A stretch of 64,000 bases of DNA, from contig BFEA01000033.1 of assembly GCA_003427395.1 (NCBI GenBank), positions 1,065,233 to 1,129,232 on the forward strand. The letters run 5' to 3'. Every line of letters begins with the position of its first letter. Position 1 is the first letter of the stretch. The translations under genes were made by a program, and so were the position numbers. Shown here piece by piece: positions 5,941-62,511 of this stretch. Under the pieces are notes generated by a model. That model was not told the DNA's origin, searched no databases, and saw only the letters and a list, made by a program, of their open reading frames with translations. The stretch comes from Chara braunii (taxonomy: Eukaryota; Plantae; Charophyceae).

Positions 5941-6020
5941 GCATGGACAATGCTTTGAACCCACTTGCAATGGACAGGCAGGCTTATGAAGCCACTAAGC
6001 TACACCGCAGCAGGAAGTGA

Positions 6021-6077
6021 CAGACTCTTTCATTGGACTCTCACCACTCATCAGGAGGCTGGACACTGGAGAATCTG
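6021..6077 (-). ncRNA. Degenerate type III hammerhead ribozyme
   Basis: Minus strand: CAGAUUC-U-C-CAGUGUCCAGCCUC-CUGAUGA-GUGG-UGAGAGU-CCAAU-GAAA-GAGUCUG; core and stem III intact, stems I and II eroded. Confidence 0.7.
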
Positions 6078-6844
6078 CAGAATCCCCTAATGTTGTTTGG
6101 ACTCCCTTGAAGTGATAATGTCTTAAGACCCAGTTAGGCAGGCATATGAAGCAACTAGTACACCGCAGCACGAAATGAAGCATCTAGGGAAGCAGCAAGG
6201 GAAAAAAAGCAGGCAGCAGTGAGGCAGATGGACAGGAGGGCAAGCAGCAAAGTGAGCAACAAGGCAATAAGGCTGGAAGCAGCCCACGCGACGATGGCAC
6301 ATGACAAGACAATTACAGGACACACGTACACAGCAAGGACCAGAGCAGACTATCACCCACTCACAGGTTCATACCACCCTCAAGAGCCAGGAGCCACAAG
6401 ATGAGGGTATATTGCCACCATGCAACACAGGCATGACGAACACACCAGCCGCAAGTAGTGTAGAAGGCACTTCCATTCAGTGCTGCCAAATCATTTGCAT
6501 ACCTGGACCACTGGACATATTGAACAGGGAGGGGAAAAGAGAAGAAAGCACAGCAGAGACTTGAGTATGTATAAGGAGTATATCTGGCAAACACTGAACA
6601 GATAACTAGTATGCTTGTGTGTGTGCTTGTCTGTGTGCCTGCATGTGTGTCAGTGGTTGTGTGCAAGGTAGAGGTACCACTTTGCCTGCCTCGCTCTGCC
6701 TCTCTGTCTGTCTCTGCCTGTGGTCTCTGTCCGTGTCTTTGTTTGTCTCTAGTCTACGGCTACGTCCCTGTGTCAATGCGCCTCTGTATTTCTCAATCAT
6801 GCTTGCTCACAAAACGATTGTAATGTTTGTATTGAACATTGCAG

Positions 6845-25469: not shown

Positions 25470-28253
25470 TCTAGTCACTGTTCATATCCCCCACCCCCCC
25501 TGGATGACCAATCGCCGAAATGGAAGGTAAGGCCGGATTCTGACTGCTAAGGCCTAGCACAGTCCTGGCCTGAAGTCTGCTTTTTTGGGGGGATCCTTGC
25601 CTCTTTCCTGACCCGTCTGGTTTTGCCGGGCAACCCCCCCTCTGCCCAACTGGCCTGGGCATGCCTGTCAGGCTGGGGCGACGGGCCAGCATAGCTAACA
25701 ACCACATAAACCTCAAAACATAACCAAAAGCACCATCCACACGGCCTGAAAAGCCTAACAAACCATAAAAGAAAGACTGACTCAGCCACACACTCTGCCT
25801 ATCTACAGTCTGAGTAGAAGGTACCGTGCCCTCTCTCAGCCCATTACCCCTACTTATCCCACCATTCTGAGAAGACTAACCTACCCTCCCCTGACACTCT
25901 AACCACCCCTTCCCTCTGACACTAAGTTGATCTGAACCAGCTCAGACCTCTCCTGCTCTTGCCCCATTGGGCCTTCCATCTCCAATCCGCTTGGATTTCC
26001 TCTTTTAACAACTTCTTGAACAATCTCTCTGCCTGGGTCTCTGGTAGGCCTTGGCCTTGGAACCGCCGGTCATTGCCATCAGCCCTTTTCACGCAGAGCA
26101 TCACAGCCCTGCACGCTTGCGCAGCGTATCCCCATCCACTGTCTGCTGCCAAACCTTCTGGTAGTGTTCCTAGCAACACCCATCGTTCCCCGGCAAAATC
26201 CTCTCTTCAGGACCCAAATTTCCAGTGGGCAAACCACTAGTCCATCCATCTCCTGGATTTGGGATATGCCCACCACAAGTGATGCAAGGTTTCAAATATC
26301 CAGCTGCAACAATCGCAGGCTTCCTTAATTGTCATGCCCTTCTTGTGCAGCCACCTGGCTACGGGAATAGTCTGATGTGACTGTAGCCAGAGCAAGGAGG
26401 CGAACTTCTGGGATGGGATCTTGGCTAGTTGCTCCCACAGGCATTGCAGTTCCTTCTGGCTGGGGGGCTCCAAGTGTGGGAACGTCTTCTGCCAGTCCCT
26501 TGGCGATTACTTCCTCCTTCCTCCGCTGTTTCTTCTGCATTGCTCCCTCTTGGTTCGCCAGGTCCCAGACAACTCCTGAATCCGTGCTCCAGCCCCATCT
26601 TGTTTGATCCACTCCCATCTCGTCACATGACATGCCCCCTGCTACTAGCTTCCCAGATCTGGGTGGCAAAACTTCACCCGGCTCAGTTGGCAGGATTCTA
26701 TTTGAGTTAGCTGTCCCATAATTTGTGGCCATACCTGCCTTCTTCAGATGTGGAAGTCCGACTATCATTCTTTCATGCATGGACAGCGTACACTTGCCTA
26801 GGACTGTATTGTTCCATCCTTCCAATCTCAAGAATTCTGTAGCTGTCCCTTCCTGCCTTCTGAACCAAGTACCGACAGCTGGCACATAATCGGGGCTTAC
26901 CATCTGCAACCGATCAGGTGGGACTGCGTTAATGAGGCACTTCATTCGCTCTTCCTGATGAGGAAGCATGCCCAGCTTTTCTTTAAGCTCGTCTGGCTTT
27001 CTCCACTGGCGAGTGATTTCATCCCACAAATCCCCCAGGGTGGAAACTCCACGCTGGATCCACTTGATCCCAAAGGAGCCTGGGGACGTTGAAGCACTGA
27101 ATGGAACTCCGGTAGCGGTGAGCAGCAAAGGGTTTTCAAACAAGTGTTGCTTCAGCACCTCACCTCTTGAGTTTTGAACGTCCGTTTATCAGGTTTGCAG
27201 TTTTGCCATGCGGACAAAATATCGCGCCAAAATTTAGATGTGATGAAATTTGCTCCTCTTATTTAGGAACACCTAGATCATTACTTCCACCCACACATCC
27301 TTTGACCGTGCCAAACCCCATTGTTGGCATAACAGCTTATCCGCCAGAAGACACCAATCTCTTCGGAGCTCTGTAGTAGCTACCTTAACTATCCAAATGG
27401 ACAGTAGCTTGACATTCTGCAACTCCGAATCCAGTAGACCTAAGTCACCCTTGTTTCTCGGTGCACATAGTGTATCCCACGCCACTTTCGAGATAGAACC
27501 TTTATCTTCGTCGGAGTTTGGCTTCTCGATGAATCTTCACGCGAAAGCCTTCACCCCCTTCACCAGCAGCTTGGATAACTTTCGCACCTTGGCCACGAAC
27601 CACAAGATAGAGAATGCAGCCACTGTCACTGCAAGAACCCTCCCTATTAAGGACAGGTGGGGGCTGCACCCCAGCTGCAAATGTGTTTCTATACTTAATT
27701 CCTGCATAATCGCAAACTGAGCTTTTGTGCAGTCCCCCAGAGCCAGCTGGACACCCAAATACAGCTCCGCTTCAACCCCTTGCGCTTCGCGCATCCCCCA
27801 TTCCATAGAAAGCTGATAGTCTGGTGGCAGAAAGTTAATGGATTTACTCCAATTTACTTCTGCCTCTGACAGCTCCGCATACCTCGTTAGACATTGCTTC
27901 AGTGCTTGCAGCGAAACGGGTCTGTTAGCTAACAGGGCCAGCAGATTGTCCGCTAATGCCTTGACGCGACCCTCCTTCCCATGTCGGAGTCTTAACCCTT
28001 GCAAAAGAGGATGCGAACGGATATCATTCAGCAATACCTCCAGTTGGAGCACGAGCAGGAGGGGTGCCAAAGGACAGCCTTGTCGCAGTGATCTGGACAG
28101 CTTGAAGGCCTCTGAGTGGTATCCATTTACCTGAACCGCTGCTGTTGAGAAGAAGTACATTGCTTTAACTCCATTGCAGAAGGCATCATCAGTCCCATGG
28201 ATTCAATTGCAGTAGCCAGGTTTTTGAAGATGGACCTCCCTTTTACTCTCCTC

Positions 28254-28436: not shown

Positions 28437-30365
28437 AGGATAAGGATTGACGCTCCTCATGGACTTCGGATGAGAAAAATGGTTGATGGGATGGATTCAT
28501 TTTGAGACACCCAAAGAGAGAGAGACAAAAGCTCCCCGATCCATCCCTACTAACCCCGACAGGAATTTCCCCAATCTGTTTGCTAGCGCTTTGGCTAGTA
28601 GCTTGTAGGAGAAATTCAACAGCAAGATAGGCCTCCAGTTCCTAATCTTGCTTCTGCTCCCTTTCTTCAAGTTTCTTGTACAACAGAGTGATGATGATGC
28701 CCCTTGTCATGGTCTCCCCCAATCTTCCACCCTGGAGCACTTTATTCAACATCAAAATGAGGTTGTTTGCCAGAGTATCCCAGCATACCTTGTAGAATTC
28801 CATCGGGAGGCTGTCATCACCTGGTGCCTTCCCTTTAGCCACCGTGCCCAATGTCGCCTTCAGCTCCTCCGCCATAAAAGGTCTGTCTAATTCCTGCCTG
28901 GCTCCTTTTGTCAGTGCCACTCCCAAGGAAGCCCATAGATCTGAGTATGCAGACAAATCTGAGTTCGGATCTTCGAACTGGGAACGAGAGGTCATTATGT
29001 CTCTGAAATAAGCTGCTGCGTAAGTGCACATACTGGCGTTTTCAGTTGTTGGTGGTAAGCTGCTGAGATGAGGATGAACAAGCTCTTTCATCTGCATATT
29101 GGCGTTTTCAGTTGTTGGTGGTAAGCTGCTGAGATGAGGATGAACAAACTCTTTCATCTGGACTGCCCTCCTTTTCGGGAGCAGTCTTTGAAAGGTCTCT
29201 TTCGTCACCCGGTCGTCTGTAACAATCTTCTTGTCTGTTTATTACTCTGTAGTACCTCCCAATCATGTTGCCTCAGTGCACTTCAACTTCTGAGATTGGG
29301 TGGCCCACCATACGTGCTTCAGCCTCCTCTACCTCCTGCTATTTCGTTGTTCCTGAGATAGTAGGCAATTGATGAAAACACCTCCATTTTACTCGAGATG
29401 ATTTTATTTTATTTTTATTTTATTTTTTTCGCGCAGGGGTCATGCTAATCTTCTTTGTATTGTTCCAATTTTAACGAATGTCCCGGACCCGAAGGACAGC
29501 TTGAGACGATTCTAGTTCCCGCATCTACCCAATCCGCTCTGTTCCCCAAGGTGTCCCTTGATCCTTCCCAATCCATCCAAAAGTTCTGCACCCAGTCCGT
29601 GATTCACTTGTCCTCTAATAAGTGCTCTTATCTCTGCTGACTGAATTGACATCACCACGGGCTTGTGATCCTACAGCACCTCGCTGTGCTCTGAAACCGA
29701 TTGAACACTACCCGCCAGTGGATCTGAGACTAGGAAAACATCCAGTCTTCTTCGAACGTGAGCCATTTGAAGAGCAGTCCTCAACCGTGTAAAACCCGGA
29801 GAGACTGGATTAATTTCCCTGTAAGCATCGTGCAGACCCCAATGTTCCGCCCAGAGCAACAATGTTCTCCCATCCGGGATCCCTCTTCATCCTCTCTTCC
29901 TTTTCTGAATCTCATCCCGGACTACTGACCATATTCCAGTCTCCACTCACAATTAGATGATCCGTCTTAGGCAGCTTTTGAGATAACATTTCAATGAATC
30001 CAATTCTGTCCAGCTGGTCATTAGGAGCATAGACTGAGGCAATGACCCAGTCCTCATTAGAGTCATTACCAATACTCAGTTTGATCCAGCTCCAGCAACC
30101 CCAATGGTCATTATCACAGTCCACCAAATCAACGTCCAACAGATTGTGAATAAGCACTGCCACCCCCCCTCTACTACCTTGCGCTGGAGACCAAATTTGA
30201 GGCCCTACCCACCAATCTTTCAACTGGCCTAGTTTAATTTCCGAGAGCTTGGTTTCCTGTATGAGTACAATATATATTCCCTGTTCATGCACCCACGTCT
30301 GTTTACCTCCTGAGTCTCCCAAGCCCTGCACGTTCCATCTCACCAGTTTAATTTTCTGCCCATGA
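25470..30365 (-). mobile_element. Decayed L1/Tx1-type LINE ORF2 (APE endonuclease, RT, C-terminal Zn finger) with 3' UTR
   Basis: WNVQGL, IQETK, GGVAVL, SVYAPN, GDWN, RLDVFL and DHKP endonuclease motifs; KAPGDD, NWRPI, LRQGCPLAP and LADN RT motifs; CDCC...ETLHHLWW; many stops; interrupted by microsatellite and gap at 28240-28530; in-frame 66-bp duplication at ~29035-29160. Confidence 0.93.
28320..28342. other. Assembly gap within (CT)n
   Basis: N run. Confidence 1.
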
Positions 30366-31029
30366 CCGCCTGTTACATGGGCTGTAGTTTGGATCTGCCC
30401 TGGGTTGGTCAGGTACAATCTGCCAAGCGGCCGCTCAGGACTTCTGCGAAATACGCAGAGGTAAGATTCCGTCTCTTTTGAAGCTCGCCATTCGATTGAC
30501 TCAAGAAGCTTGCATTCAGCCCTGGCTCTATTTATATCCTCTCCAAAATTCCGCTTGCAGGTCAGACATGAACAAGCACAAGGGAATACCCACCATTCCA
30601 ACAGAGGCTATGTTATACCAAAGTTCTGTGGGAATCTTAGCATCTATTAGCGGAATATTGCAGCGAGCCTTACCCCCTTTGGAAGATCAACCAAAAGGCA
30701 AGCTGGGGGATCGTCGGGAAACATTCTGAAAATAAAGCGCTCAGAATAGAGTTGACTTCCCTTCATAACTACAAACTGCTGTGTGGGAAGATCAACCACA
30801 TGGCAGGCAGGAATAAAAAATACTTATTGTCTGGTGCACGTAAGCCCAGGATGAAGATCTCCTGCCCTTGTAACGTGCAAACGAACGGCAACAGCAGGTT
30901 GTCTTCCATTTGCAAATCGCCTCGTGCTCTCGACACCCCCCCTTCGTTGCTTTTCTGCCTGTGACAACTTTGTTGTTGCCCTTTTTTTTTCCCTTTTCTC
31001 TTTCCCTTTTTTTTAATCTTTTTGTGTGA

Positions 31030-35533: not shown

Positions 35534-36277
35534 AGGAACATGTGCTCTCATACAGAGGGAGAAAGTGAGAGGAATATTATAGATGGACGAACTGTTCCTT
35601 GATTTGATTTTTCTGTAATTACATCGGAGGCAGAAGGTTAATAACTCAAGAGGGATGGAGTGGCCGCGGATTCCGCAATCATAATTTTGATGGACTTTTC
35701 ATTTCTTTCCTTATTTTTTTCCCTTCCTTTATAAAGGGAAAGAGAACGATTAATGTTAAGATGATTGGGCCTCCTACTCTGGGAAGGAGCACCCGGGTTC
35801 GCCTCCAGGTGCTCTTTTTTTTTTTGGGAAGGAGGAGGGCAAGCTCACGTTTTTGTTTCAAATTTCAACCTTTGCTGAGTTGCTCTCATCCCTGTCTTTT
35901 TCCTTTTCGTGAAAAGAGGAAATCACCCCTTTTTCAACCTCCTATCTATCCGAGTGTGTGTTTTCTTCTGGCAGCTCTTCTAATGAAAGGTCCCTGCAAC
36001 TTCCTTTTCCATGCAGATAGTATAGATGTCTCTTTCTCCCTTCACTGCCCCCTCCCCCCAGGGTCCCCATCCAAAACAAAGTAACGAACCCGTCCATTTT
36101 GCCATTGGAGCTCATTTTCAATTTTACATTTGGATTTTTCCACGCATCATACATTATCAATGCAATGGCCTGCACAGAATCAGTCTTAGATTTATGCTGT
36201 TTTCTGAGTATTGCTGCTTACTGGTCTGATTATCTGATATGCTGAGATTTCCGTGTTTTGTGAGAGTGTGCATGAGT

Positions 36278-36318
<41 letters not shown>

Positions 36319-36499
36319 ACAGTGTGTGTGTGTGTGTGGTGAGATGAGTCTACTGCACCTTGCGATGCAGCGAACCACGTTTATATAAGACATATAAGAC
36401 ACAACATAAATAATGCCAATAACACAGACATCACAGCATCGAACGAATCACACCATGATCCAAGCGAATATTCCATTCGACTGGGTATGCACGACCTCA

Positions 36500-37747
36500 C
36501 TGACTTCCCTAAAAGGACACAACGACTAGAGCTCGAGGGCACTGAGCCTTAAGCTGAAACAAACAATACGCAGCACCTAGGGGAAGGCAGAAAAAGGACA
36601 GCGAGGAAAAAAGGCATGCGGCATCAACAAAGGGCGAAGGCTGGAGGGCAAGGGGGAGGCCGGTGGGCGGAGAGACAACATGCCGCACAACAAACAGCAC
36701 AAGGCAGCAAAGCATATAGGCTGGAGGGCATGGGGGTGGCGGGTGGGCAGGCAAACGGCACACAGCAACAAAGCACACTAGGTGAAAAGCATGGGGTAGA
36801 CGGATGGGCAAGCAAACAGCGCAAGGCAGCGAGGGAAACAACAGCAACACAAACAACGACAATGCAAAAACAACCCCCGAAAAAAATACAAGTATAAACA
36901 AGACAAAGACTGAAAAAAAAAAATAATAATAAATAATAAATTATAATAAATAGATGATGAAAGATTGTTTCGTTGGAGTTGCACCGACTCAGCAGGAGGC
37001 TGAACCCCTAAACAATCTGCGGAATCCCCGTATTTGATGGTTTGGGTCATGAACCCTTTGACCCTTGTTGAAGGCAGACTGTCCCCAAGCGGAACATAGC
37101 AGCGGGCAGCAACCCTGCGGAGCACCAGGCAGCGCAGTAGAGGCAACACGGCTGCACAACGCCAAAAACGACTGCAAGGAACGACACGGCACGCCAAACT
37201 CGCAGCAGGGCACCCAAGCAGTGAAGCACCAGGCAACACTACCAAGACAACCACACTGCAAGGGACAAGAGGGCAAGCGGACCAGCAGCAGAGCGACCAT
37301 GCTGAGAGGCACAAGGCAACCCCAACACGGCAACCAAACTACAGTGCGCTCAAGCAAAGGACCCGGAAGGCACGACCAGCGGGCGGGCGGCAAGGCAGCG
37401 AAGCAGCGAAGCGCAAGGCAACACCACAACCCGGCCGCACCACACAGCGAAGACAGCAGCATGCCAAGAACGACCTGCGAGGCAAGCGGAGCGGGCAGCA
37501 AGGCAGTGGTGGAGCGCAGACGGGGTCGTCCACGCATCCAACACGGAGCAAAGCAGCACATCACCTACTCACATCACGGGTGAACCCCACAGACTGTTGG
37601 TTCCCACCACCCACTGAGCCAGGGAGACACTCCACCGAGCATCCGTCATCACCTACAGGCAACACAGACATCCCGAACCGAGCGGCCCCCCTAAGAGTGC
37701 AGTTGGCACTCCAAACGAGGAGCCACCGACTGTTTGGCACTACCTAA
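36500..37747 (-). mobile_element. Non-coding dispersed repeat carrying a type III hammerhead, copy 1
   Basis: Collinear with 40330-41463 (clear from ~36950 to 37747); strong C/A strand bias; right end runs into a gap. Confidence 0.75.
36962..37018 (-). ncRNA. Type III hammerhead ribozyme with a core mutation
   Basis: AGAUUG-U-U-UAGG-GGUUCAG-CCUC-CUGCUGA-GUCGG-UGCAACU-CCAAC-GAAA-CAAUCU; A6 to C and one stem II mismatch. Confidence 0.85.
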
Positions 37748-38512
37748 NNNNNNNNNNNNNNNNNNNNNNNNNNNNNNNNNNNNNNNNNNNNNNNNNNNNN
37801 NNNNNNNNNNNNNNNNNNNNNNNNNNNNNNNNNNNNNNNNNNNNNNNNNNNNNNNNNNNNNNNNNNNNNNNNNNNNNNNNNNNNNNNNNNNNNNNNNNNN
37901 NNNNNNNNNNNNNNNNNNNNNNNNNNNNNNNNNNNNNNNNNNNNNNNNNNNNNNNNNNNNNNNNNNNNNNNNNNNNNNNNNNNNNNNNNNNNNNNNNNNN
38001 NNNNNNNNNNNNNNNNNNNNNNNNNNNNNNNNNNNNNNNNNNNNNNNNNNNNNNNNNNNNNNNNNNNNNNNNNNNNNNNNNNNNNNNNNNNNNNNNNNNN
38101 NNNNNNNNNNNNNNNNNNNNNNNNNNNNNNNNNNNNNNNNNNNNNNNNNNNNNNNNNNNNNNNNNNNNNNNNNNNNNNNNNNNNNNNNNNNNNNNNNNNN
38201 NNNNNNNNNNNNNNNNNNNNNNNNNNNNNNNNNNNNNNNNNNNNNNNNNNNNNNNNNNNNNNNNNNNNNNNNNNNNNNNNNNNNNNNNNNNNNNNNNNNN
38301 NNNNNNNNNNNNNNNNNNNNNNNNNNNNNNNNNNNNNNNNNNNNNNNNNNNNNNNNNNNNNNNNNNNNNNNNNNNNNNNNNNNNNNNNNNNNNNNNNNNN
38401 NNNNNNNNNNNNNNNNNNNNNNNNNNNNNNNNNNNNNNNNNNNNNNNNNNNNNNNNNNNNNNNNNNNNNNNNNNNNNNNNNNNNNNNNNNNNNNNNNNNN
38501 NNNNNNNNNNNN
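37748..38512. other. Assembly gap
   Basis: N run. Confidence 1.
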
Positions 38513-39740: not shown

Positions 39741-40329
39741 GCTGTACTGCAGCTGCGCATTAATCCTTTCACTCTCGCCGTATATTGCTTGTTAGCAAGG
39801 ATGTTCAATTGATTTCTGCATGCTGGTTATGGGTTTCACTTTTCTGCGTGATCTGGAGGGTGTGGATTGGGGGCCGGCGGGTGGGGCAAGTATCTGGCGG
39901 GATGCTGTACACTGCGTGTTCATGGGGTATAGCAGGCATGCCTTCTGCATTGTTCATCAAATGTATGGTCATGCATGTGTGTGAGTGTGTGTGTGTTTGA
40001 GAGGTCTGTACTCCACGGCACGCGAGATACGATACATCATTACTCGTACCCGCACAGCTCCGACAAACCATGTCGGCCCACCTTGAATAAGAGACAAAGC
40101 GGGAGTGACGTTCCCCGCAGCAAACGGCCAACAAAAAAAGTTCACAGGCACGGGACAGACGCATCCAGTACTGAAAGGCAGGGAATTCTAAGCCGGACTC
40201 TACAAGCAGCATCTACTCTTCAACTTCAGTACACAGATTTGACATGGGACAGACACATCCAACAGTGGAAGGTAGGGGAAGACTATGTCAAATGATGAGA
40301 GTAGCATCAATGCTTCAGACGCCATTTTC

Positions 40330-41463
40330 AGAAAGACCAGAACACATGCAATAACACCTCACAAACAAACGGAGGGATGGGGAGGAGGCAAAGCGCAGGG
40401 AACCAACACCATAGGCTGACAAACCACAACATGGCACATGAAGTTAGAGGCACAAGAGGAGGAACAAACAGTGAGGCAGCACATAGGCTGAAGCACATGG
40501 GGGAGGCGGGAGGGCACAAGTACAAGTATTGAAAAACAACAAAGCGACCAGAAGAAAAGAAAACAGCAAAGGACAGGCTGGAGGGTGGAGGGAAGGAGGG
40601 CGGGCAGACAAACAGCGCAAGGCAAGAAAGAAAGACCAAAAAAAATACATTAAAAGCTGATGATGAAAGATTGTTTCGTCGGAGTTGCACCGACTCATCA
40701 GGAGGCTGAACCCTCAACAATCTGCGGAGTCTTCGTATTGGATGGTTTGGGTCATGAACCCTTTGACCCTTGTTGAAGGCAGACTGTCCCCCAAACGGAA
40801 CACATCAGTGGGAAGCAACCCTGCGGAGCACCACCAGGCAACGGCAACACAGCTGCACAACACCAAAAATGACTGCAAGGAATGACATGGCACGCAGGAT
40901 AAGCAGTGTGGCAACCACGCCGTGAAGCACAAGGCAACACCAACAAGGCAACCACACAGCAGGGGACGGCAATGGTTGCGGTTGAGTAGCACGGCAACCA
41001 TGCAGTGGCACACAAGGCAGCACCTACAAGGCAAGTGAACTACAAGGCACGCAAGCAACAAAGACGGAAGGCACGACCAGCGGATGAGCGGCAAGGCAGC
41101 GGAGCAGCGGAGCAGCGAAGCAGAAGGCAACACCAGCAACACGGCCACACCACACAGCGAACACAACAATTTGCAGAGAACCACATGCGAAGCAAGCGGG
41201 ACAGGCAGCAAGGCAGTGGAAGAGCACAGACGAGGCAGTCCACACATCCAAGACAGAGCAAAGCAGCACATCACCTACTCACACCACAATTGAACACCGC
41301 AGACTGTTCATTCCCACCACCCATTGAGCGAGGGAGTCACTCTGACGACCATCCGTCGTCACCCACAGGCAACACAGACATCCCTGACTGATCAGCCCCC
41401 CTAAGAGTGCAGTAGTCACTCCAAATGAGGAACTACCATTGCAACTGTTTGGCACTACTTAAG
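40330..41463 (-). mobile_element. Non-coding dispersed repeat carrying a type III hammerhead, copy 2
   Basis: Collinear with 36500-37747; both end in ccccctaagagtgcagt..cactccaaa.gagga...ctgtttggcactac.taa. Confidence 0.75.
40668..40723 (-). ncRNA. Canonical type III hammerhead ribozyme
   Basis: AGAUUG-U-U/GAGG-GUUCAG-CCUC-CUGAUGA-GUCGG-UGCAACU-CCGAC-GAA-A-CAAUCU: all core nucleotides present and three perfect helices; predicted cleavage between 40716 and 40715. Confidence 0.93.
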
Positions 41464-41544
41464 GGTGCTCAGTTGGGTGAGTAAAAGTGCTTAGAAAAAT
41501 CAGAGGGAGAACAGACAACAAGAGGAAAACAGAGGCATAAAACT

Positions 41545-41585
<41 letters not shown>

Positions 41586-41810
41586 ACAATACGTTACTCC
41601 ATGGCACAAAATGCCAAGAACCCCACAACAAGTTGTGATACGACTGTTCAAGCCACAGGTCTATAGGCTGCATCCGGTCTTATATGTATCTTCCAATGTC
41701 AAGCACTTTTCTTCCTTATGTCCGGATGCCAAGCAGCCCCACCTTTTTCCGAGAACCATATAAACATATTCAATACCAGATGAGGATGCCGTTCTGGACG
41801 ATGGTTCCTA

Positions 41811-42287
41811 TCATGCCAAGCCCTCCTGTATGAGGATTATGATGAGAGTAGCATATAGCGAAAGCAGGAGTAGAATGACGAGCAATCTTCTAATCAGTAG
41901 GAGGGTCAAATCCCTCTTGGGTCTGGTAGTGTGATGTATGGCCTCATTCAGTGTGTTAATCTCCATGCTGAGTGCCATGTTCGCTCTCATGAGTTGGTCC
42001 ACAGCCTGCTGTTCTTGCATCCTAATCTGTAGTATACTGTCCTCAAAGTCCCTAAGCAAGGAGCGGTGATCACCGTAAATTAGCGAAAAAAACATGGCAG
42101 CCCATTCCCGAATTTCATTGTAATCGTCCCCCGACGGGGCCTCATAATGGTAATCAGGGTGGATAGACGGATGATCACCTCTTCTTATCAGGACGTCATT
42201 AAGTAACGCAATACGCTTCTCTATCATAACAATCTTCTCAAGAAGGGTTGCTCGATCGTATAGCCGAGTGTCCATCGGGGTATACAA
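41811..42287 (-). CDS. Orphan 158-aa ORF, helical/coiled-coil with a hydrophobic C-terminus
   Basis: Non-repetitive, protein-like composition; first ATG at ~42275 (MDTRLY); no recognised family. Confidence 0.4.
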   Translation of the reverse strand: MYTPMDTRLYDRATLLEKIVMIEKRIALLNDVLIRRGDHPSIHPDYHYEAPSGDDYNEIREWAAMFFSLIYGDHRSLLRDFEDSILQIRMQEQQAVDQLMRANMALSMEINTLNEAIHHTTRPKRDLTLLLIRRLLVILLLLSLYATLIIILIQEGLA

Positions 42288-45621: not shown

Positions 45622-45686
45622 GGCAAGCCCCTAAAACGTTTTTCCCCGAATGCCACAATTCAGCTCATCAGAGGGATTTCAAAGCC
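45622..45686 (-). ncRNA. Type I hammerhead-like motif with palindromic stem III
   Basis: GGC-UUUGAAA-UCCCU-CUGAUGA-GCUGAAU-UGUGGC-AUUCGGG-GAA-AAACGUUU-U-AGGGG-CUU-GCC; only C11.1 is altered (to G). Confidence 0.75.
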
Positions 45687-53905: not shown

Positions 53906-56210
53906 AACCACAACAACGGGTCCTCTTAACACGGATCAGGCCCATGCAGGCCATCTGAAGGGTCCTCACAGCCATGTAGTGCGAAACCCCCACAAAATCG
54001 AGGCAGGCAGCGCATATGAAGTAGAGCACGAGCTGGCCGAATATATAGTCATGATTCGAGTTCAGGTATGTGTTTCAGCAATTATGGGTTTCTCGCGTAG
54101 CTAGGACCTGTTGATCTCTGGCATTCTCTGCACGTGACTCTTAGGGCTTGGCTGCACTACTCACGAAATGTGCAAAATTAGAATGAATCTTCTGCACAAC
54201 GTGGAATAATACGTGTTTTGTCTTTTGTGCATTTGGTGAGTAGAGGCCCTTAGGGCCACTGCACATATTCCTAAGAAAAGAAAAATGAGAAAAGAAAAGA
54301 AAAACGAGAAAAGAAAAGGAAAACAAAAGAAGAAGAAAAAAAAAAGAAAACAGAGAAATAGTGACCCATAACCGAGATGCACAGACCTGAATTTGAATCC
54401 AGACTATATATTCTCTGCCCACGCTCACGAAGTACAAGTTTGAATTGTACCTCTAGGATCCTGGCTAGTATGCTGTAGGGATCCTATTGAAAAGAGGCTG
54501 GACCCAACTAGGACAGCTTTGGGGTATGGTGTGGCCCCGACTTTTCTCCCTATTCCTTTCTGATTTTCAGAAGCGAGCGGAATGTTTGGCCACCCCACGC
54601 TGTCCTTTCAACTTTTTCATTTATTTATTTTTTTAGTGCGCCGCTGCAACCACGGAAAAAAAAAAAAAAAAAAAAAAAAACACAACAACAACCTCGTTTT
54701 CTGGGCCGTTTGGATCGTCGGTGAGGTTGGTAAAAAATAAGGCACTATTTCTTTTGGGCGGCCCAGGGCATGAACAATCGCCCCCGACCACCGAAAAAAA
54801 AAATTGGCCATTGGGCTAGGGCCCTCACATCCGGACCAAGATCCGGACCCGGACCCCGGACCACGAACGGTCCGGATCCCTGTCCAGTGGTCCGGATCGT
54901 AGCCATGCAATGAACTCATGAGCCAATGTTCAAGCCCTCATGCCACACCAACGCAATATCCAATGTCGCTCCAATTGTATGGCGCCCAGCGCCCTACCTA
55001 TTCTACCTAGCGTATCCTACCACAACCGCATTCACGCAATAGGCTCACTTCGACTTTGAAGACCAATATACATGACGTCAACACCATAGCCAACCTCCCT
55101 CATGCACCAGGTATTAACCTTCTGTCACCAGGTCACAAATGGTTAACATATCTTGTCTCCCCTCATCACCCGCTGACCACCCACAGGTCCCACACTCGCC
55201 TCCTTCCTAAAGACCACCAATCGCCTCTTACCCCCTTGCACCATACAGCACGAGCATGGCTGCCCTGTTGACCCTCTCCTTCTCCGGGCTTCTCCCCTCT
55301 TCACGTTGACAATGATAATAAGATTATTCCTGATCACACACGGAAGTGCCACATGGCACTCAATCTCATGAAAAACACGAAGACAATGCAGATTCCAGTA
55401 TCGACTTCAAACCCACGTGAGTACCCGTTCTCCCTCAACCACAGATCCCGATCTTCCTCCTCTTCACAACCAGTCACTTCATGTAGACAGCATGGACAAT
55501 GTGTCGTCAACAATCAAAAACAGGTGGCAATTGCCCCCTCATCAATGTAAACCAGTAGTAGCGCTACATCAGTAAGCCACGCAGACCACAGACAGCGCCA
55601 CGTTAGCATGCCACGTAGACCATAGGCAGCGCCACGTATACTAGAGGCAGCGCCACATCAACATATCGCCTAGACCATAGGCAACGCCACGTATACCAAA
55701 GGCAACGCCGCATTAGCATGCCATGTAAACCAGAGGCGGCGCCACATATACCAGAGGCACCGTCACATCAACATGGCATGGAACACTGAAGAAGCGTCGA
55801 CATGCTGCCTCCTACTCATGTCGTTGTCTGCAGCGCTTGTGCACAGCCAGCATAAAGCTAGCATGGTGTCAAAATCGAGCCTGCGTCAAAGCAGCATAGC
55901 AAAACTGAATGCCTTAACTCTTTCGAGGCCAACCTTAAGTAGCAATACGTGAGGTTGTCTGGCCTCGGTGCTTTTCTCTTCAATCGTCCAGATTGACTCA
56001 CAAAGTGTGAGTGCTTGACATGCGGTCTAGGCTAGGTACCTGTGGACTTTGACTGATTGGTGGACCGATAGTTGACTAAAGTCAACTGTCACACGTCATA
56101 CCCTAAATTCGTGAAGGGTTTTTTTTGCCCTTGTTAGGCGTGGGCTGGGGGTGGCTAAGTAGGCCCGCTGATGACCCTCAATTCCACGAGACATTTGGCA
56201 AGTTATTGCA
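53464..56210 (-). repeat. LTR (~1.4 kb after removing the hAT insert) with a PBS on one side and a PPT on the other
   Basis: tgcaa...ttgca termini; PBS at 53449-53460; tttctcccgactc at 56211 onward reads as a purine tract on the minus strand; 55268-55938 matches 62678-63271. Confidence 0.75.
53597..54907. mobile_element. Non-autonomous hAT-superfamily DNA transposon inserted in the LTR
   Basis: 8-bp TSD CAATGAAC (53589-53596 and 54908-54915); imperfect TIR catagctacatcggacc / ggtccggatcgtagccatg; subterminal GGACC repeats. Confidence 0.88.
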
Positions 56211-59200
56211 TTTCTCCCGACTCGATTTTTGTGTTCCATTGCAGAAAATTAATTAATTCTACGTTAACCCACATTCATATGCATCAATAATATCAAGAGC
56301 AGTGAGTGGGAGTTTTTTCCTACTAAATCATCCGGCCTTAGATGAAGGTTGGGATTTGAACTTTATCTTGTCCTTCTTCTGAGGTCGTCCTTTGCCACCT
56401 GTAGAGCAATAACCATGTTCCAATATTTTCTCAACTTCGTAACCTCCATCCATAGAAGGTAAAGTCATAAATTGCCTATTTGGAAAATCGTCACTTTCTA
56501 CATAAGGTAGCAACTTAGACGCGTGAAAAACAGGGTATATCCTAAGATGTGGAGGTTTATCTATACGGTAAGAAGGTTCATCTTCACCTCCAATTACTTT
56601 GAGAACTTCCCAGGGTCCATAGTAGACAGGTAGCAGTTTTTGACACACATTTTCTTCTAAGGAAAACTATTTCTACCTAACCCATACAAAGTGTCCTTCT
56701 TGGAATTGTGAAGGATGACGATGTTTATAAGCTTATTCAATCATTTGCAGTTGGACTTTCTGTATGTTTTCCTTCACCTTCTTGATGTCTTCTTCATACA
56801 AAACTGTAAATTCACGCGTCTCTGGGGGTAGGCTTTGAATTTGGCCCCTCGTTAATGTATCAATGAAACGCCTAGGCTTCCATCCTTTATGCAGTGCGTT
56901 AGGTATTCTACCTATGACAGTATGTATACTGTTGTTATATGCACTGACAATTTTAGGCAAGTTCTCATCCCAGTCAATATGATATGAACGGACATACATT
57001 CGCAAAAGTTGTTAACCAAGAAAATTCATTTGCTCAATTTGATCATTCGTTTCAGGATGTCTGTCTGATAACAATGGTCAATTTGGTTTTATAGACTTCC
57101 ATCAACTTTTGCCATTGTTGACTGGTGAATCAAACATTTTTATCTGATACGATAATTTTGAAAAATTCATATTGAAAGACTCATCCCATTTGAAACTTTT
57201 GGATGACTAGTTCGGTTCTCGCTTCAACAGGCGAAGGAATGAACATAGCATACTTAGAGAATCTATCAACGATTACCATTACCTGACTATTACCGTTTCG
57301 ACTCTTCGTGAGGCTCATAAAGTCAATAGAGATAGATTCACCAGACTCACTTGGAATAGGTAGTGGTCGCAATAGTCTCATTGGATTCTCATGTGAGGGT
57401 TTGTTCCTTTGACAGACAAAGCAAATCTGCATATACTTTAATGCATATTCTTTCATTCCTTTCCACTCAAAACGTTCACGAACATCGACATACGTCTTCT
57501 TTTACCACCAAAGTGTCCTTCTGCATCATATCATTCCCCAATGATCAAACTCTTAATTGATTCTAGGTGAGGAATACACAATCGTTCTTCGGTTTTGTCC
57601 AGCAAGAAGAGTAAGTCATCGGTCATTCGATATTCTGAAAACAACTCGGGGTTCTTTCGTACTGTTCCAATAACAGGACTCCAAATATGATATCTCTCAT
57701 AAACCTGGCGGATCTGCTCTTTCAGTTCATTTCCAATATCGAGATAGGAGACAATAGTTCCAAAGAAATCCGCACGCCTGGACAAAGCATCCGCAACTAC
57801 GTTAGACTTACCTTTAATGGTTTCACCTCAAAGTCAAATGTGTCGAGGAATGCGAACCACCTTACCAACTTGTTGGAGAGGTTAGGGTGAATCTTGATCC
57901 ACTTCAATGTAGACTGATCAGAGTAGACAATGAAATGTCTCCCTAACAAGTAGTGCTTTCAGGTATCTAGTGCATCTACTAAGGCATACAATTCTCTTTC
58001 ATATGTAGAGTTCGTTATTTTTTAGGACAGAAGTATTCTCGACATAAACTCAATAGGTCTATATCCTTTACCGTTATCTTGTTGTAGCACAACCCCAATC
58101 TCATACTGACTTGCGTCAGTCGTGACAATGAAAGGAAGAGAAGGGTCGTCAATTTTTAAGACATGGTAATGAGTCAAAGCATGTTTTCACTTTTTAACCG
58201 ATGACTCATAGTCTTTGTCCCACAACCAAAGTTTTTCCTTTTTCAGTAATCTCCTCATAGGAGCAACTATCAAGGAGAAGTTTTTGACGAACTTCCTATA
58301 ATAGCTAGTTAGTCCTAAGAAAGACCTTAGTTCGGTTGTAGTCTTAGGTTGTGGTCAATCTCTGATTGAATCTCTGATTGATGTAATCTGCTTTTCTTCA
58401 GGCCTTAGTCCTTCCTCGTTTACTATATGCCCTAAGTACAAAACTTCAGGCTTAGCAAACTCAGACTTCTTCGGATTCAGTTTGAAGTTGCTCTCGCGCA
58501 ACTTCTGCAAAATCGTTCGTAGGTGTTTTTCATGATCCTCTAGTGTTTTGCTATACATTAGAATGTCATCGAGATAGACTACTACGAATTGGTCAAGCCA
58601 TTGGTGGAATAACTCATTCATTGACCTTTGAAAGGTCGCAATTTGTAAGACCCAAGTGCATAACCACGAACTCGTAGTGACCATACCTGATTCGGAAAAC
58701 CGTCTTGTTTTGATCCTTAAGAACCACCTCAATCTGGTGGTACCCTGACTTGAGATCAATCTTACTGAAATACCTGCACCCCTGCAACTGATCCAATAGA
58801 TCGTCAATGCGCGAAAGAGGTTTCACGTTTTTAACAGTGACGAAATTCAGGCCGCGATAGTCAATATATAAACGAAGTTCACCTTCCTTTTAAGACACGA
58901 CTAAGATAGGCGCATCATAAGAAGATGAACTAGGGTCAATCCATCCGTTGCTAGTAAGTTCTTGCAACTGCTTCCGAAGTTCTTCAAGTTCCTTAGGAGA
59001 CATTCGGTAGATGAGACCCTTGGGATTCTTGCTTTCCGAAACGATCTCGATTGTGTGTTTAATAGCACGCTCAGTGATTCCCGTTGGCTCAGTTTGCAAG
59101 TTCTTATATTCGTCAAGAAGTTTCTCAATAGAAGGTGGATAGGATGAGAAACACTCACCAACTCGCTTGACAAGCATCATCATCACCTCCTGATCCAACT

Positions 59201-62200
59201 TCTTATTTACTACCATCGATCGAAAAGTTGGATAACTCATACAACAGAAAGACGGCGTAGAGTTAGAGTGAGACCTATGATATAACTTAATAGCACGCAG
59301 TTTGAACTTCTCGTCCTTGAGTTTGACAATTTTATCTTTAAACTCAACTTCTTGGTCTGCTTCCTCATGCCAATCCATGCCCTGAATTATATCAAAGGGT
59401 ATTTTTTTCTCAATTAGGAAAGATACTTCATGTAGAAATATTTTGTCCTTAGTTTTGAAATAACATTTGACACGATTGACATATTGAGAGACAGTGATTG
59501 CGCTCTTGTCAGCCAGTATAGACGTGATAGGTCTAGGTAAATCCTTTACCTTCAATCCAAGATGCAACTTACGAATTGCCTTTTCTAATATATAAGACCG
59601 CGTCGATCCCAGATCTAACAGAGCACCTACTCGCGTGTGCGCAATCTCAGTATCTGCGATCATCAACTCACCTTTTGACTTCGCTTTCTTCGCCCACGAG
59701 CTCCGTAATGCTATGAGTTTATTGTCAAGCTCATCAAGAGAATCGTCCAGCGAGACAGAACAAAGTAGTGTTTCAAGGTGGTCAAGACGAGCGAAAAAAG
59801 AGTCATCCTCTACCTTGAGAGTCGAAGCGGTAGAAGGGATTGTAGGTGCCTTACCTTTATCTTGGTCTAAACCCTTCAACTCAGTAGAAGCAGATGGTTG
59901 CTCGCTTTTGGGTTTCGAATAAGTGGGCACCAAGCTATCTCGTGCCCCACGGTGCCACACTTGAGGCACTGACGATTATCCATTTTGGACTCTCACTCCT
60001 CTCGAGTCATGTTCATTTTTTTCTACGGTCTCCCGAACGCGATGCCGGGATGCTCGGGAAACGAGCGTAGCCTCCTCTTCTTCTTCCACTGACTTTGGCC
60101 TCCCTTGTTGACGATTACAGCATCGACGCCACCCTTCCCAGATTCGCTGCCGCCATTACCTCCTCCTCCCTCAAACTCATCGAGGGGTAATTTTTCTACT
60201 GTCTCATCATAAAATAGCACAAGCATATGGTCCTGACGCTTTCACCGCCAAAGGACCCGCTTGCCGTACCCACCAACCGGTCCTGATTTGACTACCGAAG
60301 CGTACGTACCTTTCACTTGCATGGTCATCTGCTCTCTTTGGAGAGCGAGATCGCGAAACTGTCGATAATTGTACTTACCAAACTTTGACTCTGTCACGAG
60401 TTGTCCACGAATGGGCTCGGACAATACTCGTGAGTAAATTTACAGGACCTGGTTATCTTGCAAATTCAACCCAGGTACCTGCAAAAGAAGATCAACTTCA
60501 CGAGACAGTGAATCAACCGAAGACCAACGCTTCTGGCGAATGGTGGTGAGTTCGTCGAAAGCCTTATCGATTGTCGTTTTATCGAGCAATCTTTCCTTAA
60601 CCTTTTGGAGAAATTGTCTCAACGTCAAAGTCTTAGCCCACTCACCTATATCCTCGAAGCCAGCAGCATTGGCGTCGGCCAACACCCACTGCTTAGCCAC
60701 TCCTCCCAAACACGACGTGGAGAAAATGACCCGACTCTCGGGCTCAACGGGTGTTGTTCCGACGTAGGTCTGAATTTCCGCAATCCAGAACAACAAGTTT
60801 TCTTCCTTCTTGTTGTTGTACATGAATGACACTTTTATTTTAACATTTTATTTTTTCGTTTTTTTTGCTTCCTTCACCGGTTCTTCTTTTTTTTTCGGTG
60901 AGTGATTCCTTCTTCTCAACTTGTCTCTCAGGTTATTTCTTAGAACCTTCGGGTTTCTCGGGTGTGCCTCCTTTTATCGCGTCCTTCATTAATTTTTATT
61001 GGGGTTCCTTCTTGTCTTCTCTGCCCTTGGCCACCTTTTTATACACCACTTTTTTTTTTTCCTTCTGTCATTCTGATCATTGTCTCCATAGCGGCGGTGT
61101 TACTGTCAATTTTCTTCTTGAGATGAACGAGGTAGATCGTAATAGACTGAAGAATAAATGCAACCTCACTACCTACTTCTTCGTAATTAAACTTTTACCT
61201 CAATTCATTCATTACTTTTTCTTTTTTTTGCTGTTCTTTCAATTCTTCAATCTTCCTCCTGTCGTCTTTTAATGTACTCTCAAGTTGCCTGACGTTTCCC
61301 TCCATTATTTCTACAGACAATTGTTCTTTTTTTCTTCCTTTCTTCTTTCATTTTTTGATCCATCTTTTCAAAGTCATCGACGACATATTGATCAAGGATC
61401 AGTCGTCCTTGCTTTATGAGGTCTTCGCCCCGCTTGCCTGTTTCTATTATCTGAACAACAGTTTTAACGACATGTAGATCTCTTTCAGCATCTCGCAGAT
61501 TGATCCGTCTGTGAACGTCCTATTCAGCATCTAGACCGACACCATGTATCTCAACAAGAAGTTGGCGAAGGAAGCCGACCCAAGTATGCCTCCTTGCGTA
61601 AATCTAACCACGGGTTTTCAGTTCCACTCCCTCTTCAACGACAAAGACAGTAAGAGGAATGGAGAAAAAAATCAGCCGTATGAACCGAGTCAAGATAGAG
61701 GCACGCAGATATTTCCAAAGAGAACTCGTTTTGTTAAACGTACAGATGCCGCACAATAAGTAAAATTAAAAGACAAAAATAAATTTCACGACGCACGCAA
61801 CTTACAACAAAAGTTATTCAAAGCATATACAAAGAAACACATATTTTACTAAGTCTAACTTCGTTATCTGTTCTTTCTATGTGATGACGTCCTACAGTAT
61901 GTGTACAAGTACCGCAGCCATGACCAATGTGATCAAGACAACAACACACAGGTGAGTATGCAAGGACACCGCAGAACAACCAATCAAGTGAGTAAAACCA
62001 ACACTCCAACACAATCAATTGTTAGCTTCCTCTCTTATGGTTGTACTATCTGCAGCAACCAAACATATTACACACTCAACACCTCACTCAGCCACGCAGG
62101 CCACTCAATGGAGTGCCACGTCAACACATCAAGAACCCAGAGGGTGTACAAGGGGAATGTCACGTTAGCAGGGCGTGCCTGTCACGCACATTACACTGCC

Positions 62201-62511
62201 ATGCCACACGTAGGCACTATGCCACATCAGCGATCCAATTCACACACTTCATTTCATTGGACCGGCATCCTATCAGCGTGTTGCATACGAAACTCTTGCC
62301 TGTGTGTCTTCAATGCAGCTACGTCATCAGTCTTCAAGGGACGGCTGCTCACAAGTGCATTACTACAATGTCGAGACTTGCGGTATGACCGCGTGCGTTA
62401 ATAAACGCGTTTCGTTTTGCACATGCGGCACCTCCCACTTACGTGGGTGCCACGTCAGCACCTGACAGCAAACAGCAGATTGCGATGAAGAAGTTCGCTC
62501 CGATACCAAAT
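56211..62511 (-). mobile_element. Internal region of a decayed Ty3/gypsy chromovirus (gag-PR-RT-RH-IN-chromodomain), PBS 62497-62508
   Basis: gag fragments 60023-61400; LLDLGST protease; [11 protein letters not shown] and YLDD RT; CFVCQRNK and VIVDRFSK integrase; YEVEKILEH chromodomain; many disruptions. Confidence 0.93.

What the first reader, a model, noticed from the sequence alone, without database searches (positions are those of the whole stretch)
40668..40723. Intact type III hammerhead ribozyme inside a non-coding dispersed repeat: candidate retrozyme-like system in an alga-like genome
Seen: the minus strand has every hammerhead core element (CUGAUGA, GAAA, GUU cleavage triplet) and three perfect helices (GAGG/CCUC, GUCGG/CCGAC, AGAUUG/CAAUCU). 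It sits in a ~1.1-kb repeat with no credible ORF. Established: type III hammerheads typify viroids, satellite RNAs and angiosperm LTR retrozymes, which are non-autonomous elements that make circular RNAs. Inference: this is a ribozyme-processed non-autonomous retroelement family. I see no LTR pair, PBS or PPT around it, so it may differ from described plant retrozymes. Loop 1 GUU and loop 2 AAC are complementary and could supply the tertiary contact.
Basis: partly seen in the sequence, partly recalled or inferred. Interest (0 to 1): 0.92.

Follow-up and report, generated by a model that had tools for sequence, protein, structure and literature searches.

The report
Intact hammerhead ribozyme in algal retroposon
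A complete, probably active self-cutting RNA motif (type III hammerhead) sits in one copy of a very abundant non-coding jumping element of a stonewort-type alga; the motif is real, but this scan has met its ribozyme-bearing retroelement family before, and Penelope-like relatives with hammerheads are already published for Chara braunii.

Summary
The minus strand 40723-40668 carries every invariant hammerhead nucleotide and three uninterrupted helices. The predicted cut lies between 40716 and 40715. A motif this strict never arose in 1000 shuffles of the window. Rfam scores it only 23.4 bits, below its 48.5 threshold.

The motif lies in a non-coding element that starts right after a (CA)18 microsatellite at 41547. 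The conserved part ends at 40659, and a variable T-rich and CT-rich tail follows. Copy A (37747-36953) and a relic (6079-6020) carry dead ribozymes.

Public reads of the same organism show that the roughly 55-nt ribozyme module is shared by several families. Its summed DNA word depth is about 3x10^4 times that of single-copy flank. Many copies begin 1-8 nt after the cut site, directly next to (TA)n. The family is transcribed with a strand bias.

There is no LTR pair, PBS, ORF or rod-like fold, so this is not a plant-type retrozyme. My best reading is a non-autonomous, Penelope-like (Chlamys-type) retroposon whose RNA is trimmed by the ribozyme.

Cleavage, circular RNA, the transcribed strand and the autonomous partner remain unshown. 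The scan found this family before on other DNA of this genome.

The parts
40668..40723 (-). Type III hammerhead ribozyme. Helix III 40723-40717/40674-40668; U17 = 40716; predicted cut 40716|40715; helix I 40715-40702; core CUGAUGA 40701-40695; helix II 40694-40678; GAA 40677-40675.
40724..41547 (-). Non-coding body of the element upstream of the ribozyme. It is A-poor (13% A) on the ribozyme strand. The last ~70 nt before the ribozyme are the best conserved part.
41548..41583 (-). (CA)18 microsatellite abutting the element's 5' end. The same junction, (CA)n followed by AATCAGTTTTATG, occurs in an independent copy in L001.
40654..40667 (-). Conserved 3' stretch UUUCAUCAUCAG after the ribozyme. 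UCAUCAG (40660-40654) is complementary to the catalytic core CUGAUGA and competes with helix III in the predicted fold.
40478..40653 (-). Variable T-rich tract followed by a CT-rich tail holding ~61-nt minisatellite-like units. Copy A and L001 share it only patchily. Whether it belongs to the element is uncertain.
36953..37747 (-). Copy A of the same element, 81% identical and cut at its 5' side by the N gap 37748-38512. Its hammerhead (37018-36962) is dead: core CUGCUGA, a C-A mismatch in helix II, and a 1-nt insertion at the cleavage site.
6020..6079 (-). Diverged hammerhead relic of a different, more abundant subfamily. Helix III is kept through a G-C to C-G change and a U-A to U-G change. 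Helix I is broken and helix II is damaged.

Best explanation
The motif is a genuine type III hammerhead ribozyme, and probably still catalytically competent. It is carried by one copy of a non-coding, non-LTR retroposon. The conserved part is about 0.9 kb (41547-40659) and a variable tail follows.

The element belongs to a hyper-abundant superfamily of hammerhead-bearing retroelements in this genome. Earlier scan notes name the genome Chara braunii, and my evidence fits that name without proving it.

The element encodes nothing. I infer that it is copied in trans by the reverse transcriptase of Penelope-like (Chlamys-type) elements. Those elements are published as carrying canonical hammerheads in C. 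braunii and as targeting (CA)n.

Mechanism (inferred):
1. Transcripts that include the ribozyme fold it as they are made and cut between U40716 and G40715.
2. The 3' product, which starts at G1.1, or a uncut full-length RNA as in this copy, is reverse-transcribed at a nicked microsatellite.
3. This accounts for the many family members whose DNA starts a few nucleotides after the cut site, directly next to (TA)n.
4. A downstream UCAUCAG can pair with the catalytic core and may shut the ribozyme off once the RNA is complete.

Shown: the motif, the family, its abundance, transcription, the non-coding nature and the microsatellite junction. Inferred: cleavage, retrotransposition, the Penelope-like partner and the sense strand.
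For: - The canonical core and three helices are present, and the strict motif occurred in none of 1000 shuffles. The local minimum-energy fold is the hammerhead.
- Across four copies H17 is U, A, U and C, never G. Helix III keeps pairing through one double and one single compensating change.
- The ribozyme is more conserved than the body: 93% against 80% versus copy A (P = 0.006), and 95% versus L001.
- Summed DNA word depth is 570,000 and 399,000 over the ribozyme bins, 2,500-167,000 over the body, and 17 for single-copy flank.
- None of the 41 best-supported differences listed falls in 40649-40804, so this copy's ribozyme matches the family majority there (313 further rows were not shown).
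- Hundreds of reads carry (TA)n directly upstream of 40707-40714, which is 1-8 nt after the cut site (table 7).
- Raw RNA reads cover the element with a 5-10-fold strand bias, so this is RNA and not DNA carry-over.
- The body is non-coding. Substitutions fall 30/31/33 by codon position, indels are not multiples of 3, and there is no Pfam hit.
- The 5' junction at (CA)n is identical in two independent loci.
- Craig et al. 2021 (PMC8557442) report hammerheads in C. braunii Chlamys elements, (CA)n targeting, and non-autonomous Chlamys derivatives that share 3' ends with autonomous families.
- Li et al. 2026 (bioRxiv 10.64898/2026.07.22.740005) derive animal non-LTR retrozymes from Penelope-like pLTRs.
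Against: - The Rfam score is below threshold.
- RNA reads show no pile-up of ends at the cut site, and no back-joint at the cleavage site appears among the joints listed. The libraries are oligo-dT selected, so this is weak evidence.
- With its 3' tail included, the predicted minimum-energy fold is an inactive alternative (-19.5 against -17.2 kcal/mol; helix III pair probability 0.12).
- The cleavage triplet is GUU, which to my knowledge is less common than GUC or GUA in natural hammerheads.
- If the RNA libraries are of the usual dUTP type, most body transcripts are from the + strand, antisense to the ribozyme.
- I could not fetch any autonomous partner or compare with the Chlamys-2_cBra consensus. 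Protein routes to more copies gave only one locus.
- The organism name rests on earlier scan notes. My own indirect support is DNA runs dated 2018, and a related contig from assembly GCA_003427375.1 whose accession number lies next to that of the C. braunii reference, GCA_003427395.1.
Confidence: 0.55

Rival explanations
1. The repeat is not a separate non-autonomous family. It is the 3' terminal part (3' UTR with the published '3'-HHR') of 5'-truncated copies of an autonomous Chlamys-2_cBra-type Penelope-like element. The ribozyme would then be the one Craig et al. 2021 already described.
For: Craig et al. describe a C. braunii Chlamys type with a canonical 3' hammerhead, frequent 5' truncation and (CA)n targeting. 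Here the ribozyme lies near the 3' end of the conserved part.
Against: Two independent copies share exactly the same 5' end at (CA)n, which random 5' truncation would not give. No reverse transcriptase, endonuclease or zinc-knuckle coding remnant lies upstream of either copy. The published consensus was not available for comparison.
Confidence: 0.2
2. The element's sense strand is the + strand. It would be a retroposon with a constant 3' end followed by a (TG)n tail and a ragged 5' end. The hammerhead then lies on the antisense strand and is a hitch-hiking or inactive module in this family.
For: The constant end is the microsatellite end, while the other end is ragged. This is the usual pattern for target-primed reverse transcription. 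Body RNA reads are 5-10 times more often 'first mate on -', which means + strand RNA in the most common library type. The + strand is A-rich and T-poor.
Against: Family members end 1-8 nt from the cut site, which self-cleavage explains simply. Over the ribozyme bins the strand ratio is reversed. The library type is unknown.
Confidence: 0.12
3. It is a plant-type retrozyme or viroid-like system. Copies B and A would act as ribozyme-bearing terminal repeats, and the RNA between two cuts would circularise and replicate.
For: It has a type III hammerhead, as in angiosperm LTR retrozymes (PMC4918200). Copies B and A are direct repeats 3.7 kb apart.
Against: B and A are only 81% identical and A's ribozyme is dead. 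No tRNA-Met primer-binding site lies between 36 and 42 kb. The 889-nt RNA folds no better than shuffles (z = -0.85), unlike rod-like or branched retrozyme circles. No back-joint at the cleavage site appears among the joints listed.
Confidence: 0.05
4. It is a chance match to the hammerhead consensus with no ribozyme history.
For: The Rfam score is below threshold. The local fold energy is unexceptional against shuffles (z = -0.96).
Against: The strict motif hit 0 of 1000 shuffles. The same motif recurs in homologous copies and in a vast family, and is more conserved than its surroundings.
Confidence: 0.02

Closest known systems
Chlamys-type Penelope-like elements of Chara braunii (Chlamys-2_cBra with a canonical 3' hammerhead; endonuclease-less PLE-X type) and non-autonomous Chlamys derivatives such as MRC1 of Chlamydomonas (Craig et al. 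2021, PMC8557442)
   Same: Same probable host genome. Both have a canonical hammerhead, a junction at (CA)n, same-orientation neighbouring copies (L001; copies B and A) and high copy number. The idea of non-autonomous derivatives is also published.
   Different: This copy has no reverse transcriptase, endonuclease or gag-like ORF. The paper does not state the hammerhead type, and it does not describe ribozyme-bearing non-autonomous elements in Chara. Sequence similarity to the published consensus could not be tested.
Angiosperm LTR retrozymes (Cervera et al. 2016, PMC4918200)
   Same: Both are non-coding and non-autonomous, carry a type III hammerhead, and belong to a transcribed family.
   Different: There are no LTRs, PBS or PPT, no stable rod-like or branched fold, and no circle shown. 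The junctions are at microsatellites rather than 4-bp target duplications. Copy number is orders of magnitude higher.
Metazoan non-LTR retrozymes (Cervera and de la Pena 2020, PMC7229834; Li et al. 2026 bioRxiv 10.64898/2026.07.22.740005)
   Same: Both are non-LTR and non-coding, carry a ribozyme, and have a proposed Penelope-like origin and mobilisation.
   Different: The animal elements are 170-400-nt tandem units with type I hammerheads, which often need dimers. This one is about 0.9 kb and dispersed, with a type III hammerhead whose 7-bp helix III should allow cutting as a monomer.
Hammerheads of Avsunviroidae and plant virus satellite RNAs
   Same: The type III topology is the same, and the GUC...GAC-type helix II next to the core is similar (Rfam alignment).
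   Different: This motif is encoded in nuclear DNA inside a repeat. There is no sign of an autonomous RNA replicon.
Environmental and phage hammerheads with helix II GUCGG-UGNRANU-CCGAC (16 metagenome and 4 viral contigs)
   Same: Helix II is identical and loop 2 nearly so. The relic at 6020-6079 carries the variant loop UGAGAGU, which is also seen in those contigs.
   Different: In those contigs helix III is a closed hairpin after GAAAC and helix I is open. Their flanks are unrelated. This is a shared structural solution, not the same element.

Membership tests
Hammerhead ribozyme, type III (Rfam RF00008) | Invariant core: C3 U4 G5 A6 N7 G8 A9, G12 A13 A14, the A15.1-U16.1 pair, the G10.1-C11.1 pair, and H17 not G | tested here: met
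   All are present at 40723-40668 on the minus strand.
Hammerhead ribozyme, type III (Rfam RF00008) | Three helices around the core, with helices I and II closed by loops and helix III open | tested here: met
   The helices are 4, 5 and 7 bp. The minimum-energy fold of the 71-nt stretch is exactly this.
Hammerhead ribozyme, type III (Rfam RF00008) | Score at or above Rfam's gathering threshold | tested here: not met
   23.4 bits against 48.5. The alignment omitted the 5' strand of helix III.
Hammerhead ribozyme, type III (Rfam RF00008) | Structure supported by conservation or covariation among homologues | tested here: inconclusive
   Only four copies were available. 93.5% of cells pair, there is one compensatory pair in helix III, and H17 is U/A/U/C. 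The ribozyme is more conserved than the body. The shuffle control is not significant (109 of 500).
Hammerhead ribozyme, type III (Rfam RF00008) | Self-cleavage at the predicted site | not testable with these tools
   RNA reads show no pile-up of ends, but the libraries are oligo-dT selected. An in vitro assay is needed.
Plant LTR retrozyme | Two LTRs, each with a hammerhead, flanking a 600-1000-nt non-coding core | tested here: not met
   The only direct pair (B and A) is 3.7 kb apart and 81% identical, and one of its ribozymes is dead.
Plant LTR retrozyme | tRNA-Met primer-binding site and polypurine tract | tested here: not met
   No PBS-like match lies between 36 and 42 kb. The matches found in the window lie at other coordinates, several beside the LTR repeats.
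Plant LTR retrozyme | Unit-length circular RNA | tested here: inconclusive
   No back-joint at the cut site appears among the joints listed. Poly(A)-selected libraries are unsuitable for finding circles.
Metazoan non-LTR retrozyme | Short (170-400 nt) tandem units with type I hammerheads | tested here: not met
   The hammerhead is type III, the conserved unit is about 0.9 kb, and the copies are dispersed.
Penelope-like element (Chlamys) or its non-autonomous derivative | Reverse transcriptase with or without a GIY-YIG endonuclease ORF (autonomous member) | tested here: not met
   There is no coding signature and no Pfam hit in or next to the element. At best it is a non-autonomous derivative.
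Penelope-like element (Chlamys) or its non-autonomous derivative | Insertion at (CA)n or other microsatellites | tested here: met
   (CA)18 abuts the 5' end of B. The same junction occurs in L001, and (AC)n lies upstream of A across the gap. Family reads abut (TA)n.
Penelope-like element (Chlamys) or its non-autonomous derivative | Partial tandem (pLTR), head-to-tail or inverted arrangements | tested here: inconclusive
   L001 holds two same-orientation copies with ~700 nt between the end of the first and the start of the second. B and A are direct repeats, and all three window copies are on one strand. No inverted copy was found.
Penelope-like element (Chlamys) or its non-autonomous derivative | 3'-end similarity to an autonomous family of the same genome | not testable with these tools
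   The published consensus sequences are not held, and no eukaryotic genome search tool is available.

The most novel reading that the evidence does not exclude
Streptophyte algae harbour a hugely amplified class of Penelope-like-mobilised, non-LTR 'retrozymes' with type III hammerheads. These elements would be the evolutionary bridge between animal non-LTR retrozymes (type I) and angiosperm LTR retrozymes and viroid-like RNAs (type III). Intact copies such as this one would still self-cleave in vivo, and possibly yield circular RNAs.
Probability: 0.25. Interest if true: 0.8.

Novelty: new variant of a known kind. Interest (0 to 1): 0.5.

Why it matters
In eukaryotes, type III hammerheads are regarded as a feature of angiosperm LTR retrozymes and of the circular RNAs that infect plants. 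Penelope-like elements and animal retrozymes carry type I motifs (PMC7761336). A non-LTR element with a type III hammerhead, associated with microsatellites and present at roughly 10^4 copies in a charophyte, would join those two worlds. It would also give a testable system for what the ribozyme does in retrotransposition: defining the RNA's 5' end, or making circles. This locus offers an intact ribozyme next to a natural dead-core control (copy A). The value is tempered: hammerheads in C. braunii Chlamys elements are published, and the scan has already reported this family on other pieces of the genome.

Tried and rejected
1. Coding capacity. The 186-aa ORF that ends at the cut site is an artefact of an A-poor strand. 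It shows no codon-position bias, its indels shift the frame, and it has no Pfam hit.
2. More copies through proteins. Two database searches with that ORF found only one relative (P0001, giving L001). A search with the peptide encoded by the ribozyme found nothing. P0001 carries no name.
3. Assembly accession of the window. Looking up its ORFs found nothing on record.
4. Exact ribozyme in JGI metagenomes. No matches. A looser pattern found only unrelated hammerheads that share helix II.
5. Viroid- or retrozyme-like compact fold of the 889-nt RNA. Not better than shuffles.
6. PBS and inverted copies. None found.
7. A 1.5-kb unit running from (CA)n to (CA)n. Rejected, because the distal ~300-500 nt before the downstream (CA)n are not homologous among the three copies (z about 0). 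The equal spacing remains unexplained.
8. Earlier findings by sequence.
9. Read-end evidence for cleavage. None seen. The libraries are oligo-dT selected, so this does not count against cleavage.

Full report
**Observation.** On the minus strand, 40723-40668 reads as a textbook type III hammerhead.
- Helix III is AGAUUGU/ACAAUCU, 7 bp counting the A15.1-U16.1 pair.
- H17 is U40716.
- Helix I is GAGG/CCUC with loop GUUCAG.
- The core is CUGAUGA.
- Helix II is GUCGG/CCGAC with loop UGCAACU, closed by the required G10.1-C11.1 pair.
- GAA follows.

The 71-nt stretch folds into this shape as its minimum-energy structure.

My own descriptor finds this one site in the window. In 1000 dinucleotide shuffles, a loose descriptor (helices of 3 bp or more) hit 10 times in total. 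One as strict as the real motif hit never.

Rfam's Hammerhead_3 model scores it only 23.4 bits against a threshold of 48.5, in an alignment that dropped the 5' strand of helix III. By Rfam's criterion alone it would not be called.

**Copies in the window.** BLAST and a covariance model built from the copies find exactly three, all on the minus strand.
- Copy B holds the intact motif.
- Copy A (37747-36953) is 81% identical to 41462-40659 and is cut off by the N gap 37748-38512. Its ribozyme is dead: core CUGCUGA, a C-A mismatch in helix II, and an extra U at the cleavage site.
- The relic at 6079-6020 has a broken helix I but keeps helix III through a G-C to C-G change and a U-A to U-G change.

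A fourth and fifth copy lie on L001, a 1534-nt contig of NCBI assembly GCA_003427375.1. One of them has a near-intact ribozyme with a GUA site and a G10.1-U11.1 pair.

Across the four ribozymes, H17 is U, A, U and C, never G. The ribozyme, together with the ~70 nt before it, is the best conserved part of the element: 93-95% identical against about 80% for the body. With only four sequences, formal covariation statistics are not significant.

**Anatomy of the element.**
- *5' end.* Copy B and the second L001 copy share the same junction: a (CA)n run, then AATCAGTTTTATG, with no homology upstream of the repeat. The element therefore begins at 41547, next to (CA)18 (41548-41583). Copy A also has (AC)n upstream, across its gap.
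- *3' side.* Firm homology among B, A and L001 ends about 9 nt after the ribozyme, at 40659. A T-rich tract of variable length follows, then a CT-rich tail with ~61-nt units that the copies share only patchily, down to about 40478.
- *Unexplained spacing.* The next (CA)n lies 615-680 nt after the end of the element's conserved part, 9 nt past the ribozyme, in all three copies. The intervening distal sequence is not homologous (z about 0), so I leave this unexplained.
- *Coding.* The body is non-coding. Substitutions between B and A fall 30/31/33 on the three codon positions, indels are 1, 4, 5 or 8 nt, and no ORF hits Pfam. The long ORFs come from a strand with only 13% A.
- *Absent features.* There is no tRNA-Met primer-binding site near the element and no inverted copy. 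The 889-nt RNA folds no better than shuffles.

**Reads.** Public runs labelled with one coded organism hold the stretch. There are four DNA data sets from 2018, and raw oligo-dT RNA-seq from 2026. I laid reads at 85% likeness on 40000-41900.
- *DNA depth.* Summed DNA word depth is 17 on single-copy flank, 2,500-167,000 over the body, and 399,000-570,000 over the two ribozyme bins. It drops to 100-1,600 below 40640. The tool warns that this is not a copy number. As an order of magnitude it points to about 10^4 copies of the ribozyme module and fewer of this body.
- *Shared module.* Most reads that match the ribozyme leave this locus at 40672 on one side and at 40725 on the other. The ~55-nt module is therefore shared by families with different flanks. 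The relic at 6079-6020 belongs to the majority type.
- *Copies starting near the cut site.* Hundreds of reads carry (TA)n directly upstream, in ribozyme sense, of 40707-40714. That is 1-8 nt after the cut site.
- *Match to the family majority.* None of the 41 listed best-supported differences lies in 40649-40804, so this copy's ribozyme equals the family majority there. 313 further rows were not shown.
- *RNA.* Reads cover the body with a 5-10-fold excess of 'first mate on -', which shows real, strand-biased RNA. Over the ribozyme bins the ratio is reversed (about 1.5 to 1).
- *No sign of cleavage or circles.* No place shows a pile-up of molecule ends, and no back-joint at the cut site was listed. 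I could not calibrate the library's strandedness.

**Mechanism.** The simplest reading is a non-autonomous retroposon whose RNA is trimmed by its own ribozyme. Uncut RNA gives full-length copies such as B. Cut RNA gives copies that begin just after G1.1 next to a microsatellite.

A 7-bp helix III should allow cutting as a monomer. Once the 3' tail is included, the predicted best fold pairs the core CUGAUGA with the downstream UCAUCAG (-19.5 against -17.2 kcal/mol). Cutting may therefore be confined to a co-transcriptional window. Copy A largely keeps that tail (UCAUCA, 6 of the 7 bases), but L001 does not, so this is a hypothesis only.

**Comparison with the literature.**
- Craig et al. 2021 (PMC8557442) report three Chlamys-type Penelope-like groups in Chara braunii. 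One has a canonical 3' hammerhead and a gag-like ORF, and an endonuclease-less group also has canonical hammerheads. They report insertion bias for (CA)n and (C)n, very high copy numbers, and non-autonomous derivatives in Chlamydomonas that share 3' ends with autonomous families.
- Li et al. 2026 derive animal non-LTR retrozymes from Penelope-like pLTRs.
- Reviews assign type III hammerheads to plants and their circular RNAs, and type I to animals and Penelope-like elements (PMC7761336). They mention only 'putative retrozyme sequences' in algae (PMC11722881; PMC4918200).

This element fails the defining tests for a plant LTR retrozyme and for a metazoan non-LTR retrozyme. It fits a Penelope-like non-autonomous derivative on the features I could test. 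The decisive test, similarity to an autonomous element, was not possible.

**Rivals.**
1. It is merely the 3' part of truncated autonomous Chlamys-2-type copies. The shared discrete 5' end argues against this.
2. The element's sense strand is the + strand, with a (TG)n tail, and the hammerhead is antisense. The constant microsatellite end, and the strand bias if the libraries are dUTP-type, speak for this. The conservation pattern of the ribozyme and the ends near the cut site speak against it.
3. It is a true circular-RNA retrozyme. There is no support.
4. It is a chance match. This is excluded.

**Earlier scan notes.** Notes name the genome Chara braunii and describe the same superfamily on other pieces. 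I used them as leads. My own evidence for the organism is indirect.

**Verdict.** This is a real, intact ribozyme and a useful locus. It is a new variant of a known kind rather than a new system.

Noticed in passing
window 29398-29497 (-): A U6 snRNA match (62.6 bits, above Rfam's threshold) lies between a LINE-like endonuclease ORF (29912-30601, Exo_endo_phos) and a reverse-transcriptase ORF (27537-28160, RVT_1) on the same strand. It could be a U6 retro-pseudogene inside or next to a LINE.
   Followed up: no
window 7670-17567 (-): A Ty3/gypsy LTR retrotransposon. Its LTRs lie at about 7670-9435 and 16011-17567. A tRNA-Met-type PBS is at 16010-15999. Protease and RT (11542-13029), RNase H with integrase zinc finger (10726-11268) and integrase (9907-10632) ORFs are present.
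   Followed up: partly
window 55263-63272 (-): A second LTR element. Direct repeats 55263-55938 and 62674-63272 are 84-90% identical. An aspartyl-protease ORF lies at 58890-59969 and a PBS-like site at 62497-62508. A further gypsy fragment at 51765-53058 matches 9953-11275.
   Followed up: no
window 19465-20700 (+): Remnants of a chromodomain-bearing integrase (Integrase_H2C2, SH3_Tf2-1 and Chromo domains) from another Ty3/gypsy-type element, ending at the N gap 21094-21724.
   Followed up: no
window 45622-45686: The minus strand holds CUGAUGA followed by GAAAAACGUUUU. My type III descriptor and Rfam at E up to 10 did not report it.
   Followed up: no
window 39976-39996, 36258-36338; L001 ~1300-1322: In all three copies a (CA)n run lies 615-680 nt after the end of the element's conserved part, 9 nt past the ribozyme, on the same strand. 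Yet the distal sequence between them is not homologous. This is unexplained; it may reflect clustering of (CA)n-targeting insertions.
   Followed up: partly
L002-L021 (metagenome and viral contigs): Unrelated environmental and phage hammerheads share helix II and loop 2 (GUCGG-UGNRANU-CCGAC) with the algal ribozyme. Both loop variants seen in the window (UGCAACU-like and UGAGAGU) occur among them. This looks like a recurrent structural module.
   Followed up: partly
window 40672-40714 (run X5, table 5): One contig of a presumed RNA data set (depth 229) joins 40714 back to 40672, which is a head-to-tail repeat of a 43-nt ribozyme segment. It may be an assembly loop or a real tandem or circular form.
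   Followed up: no
window 41811-42287 (-): A 158-aa ORF with a coiled-coil-like middle and a hydrophobic C-terminus lies just upstream of the element. It has no Pfam hit.
   Followed up: no
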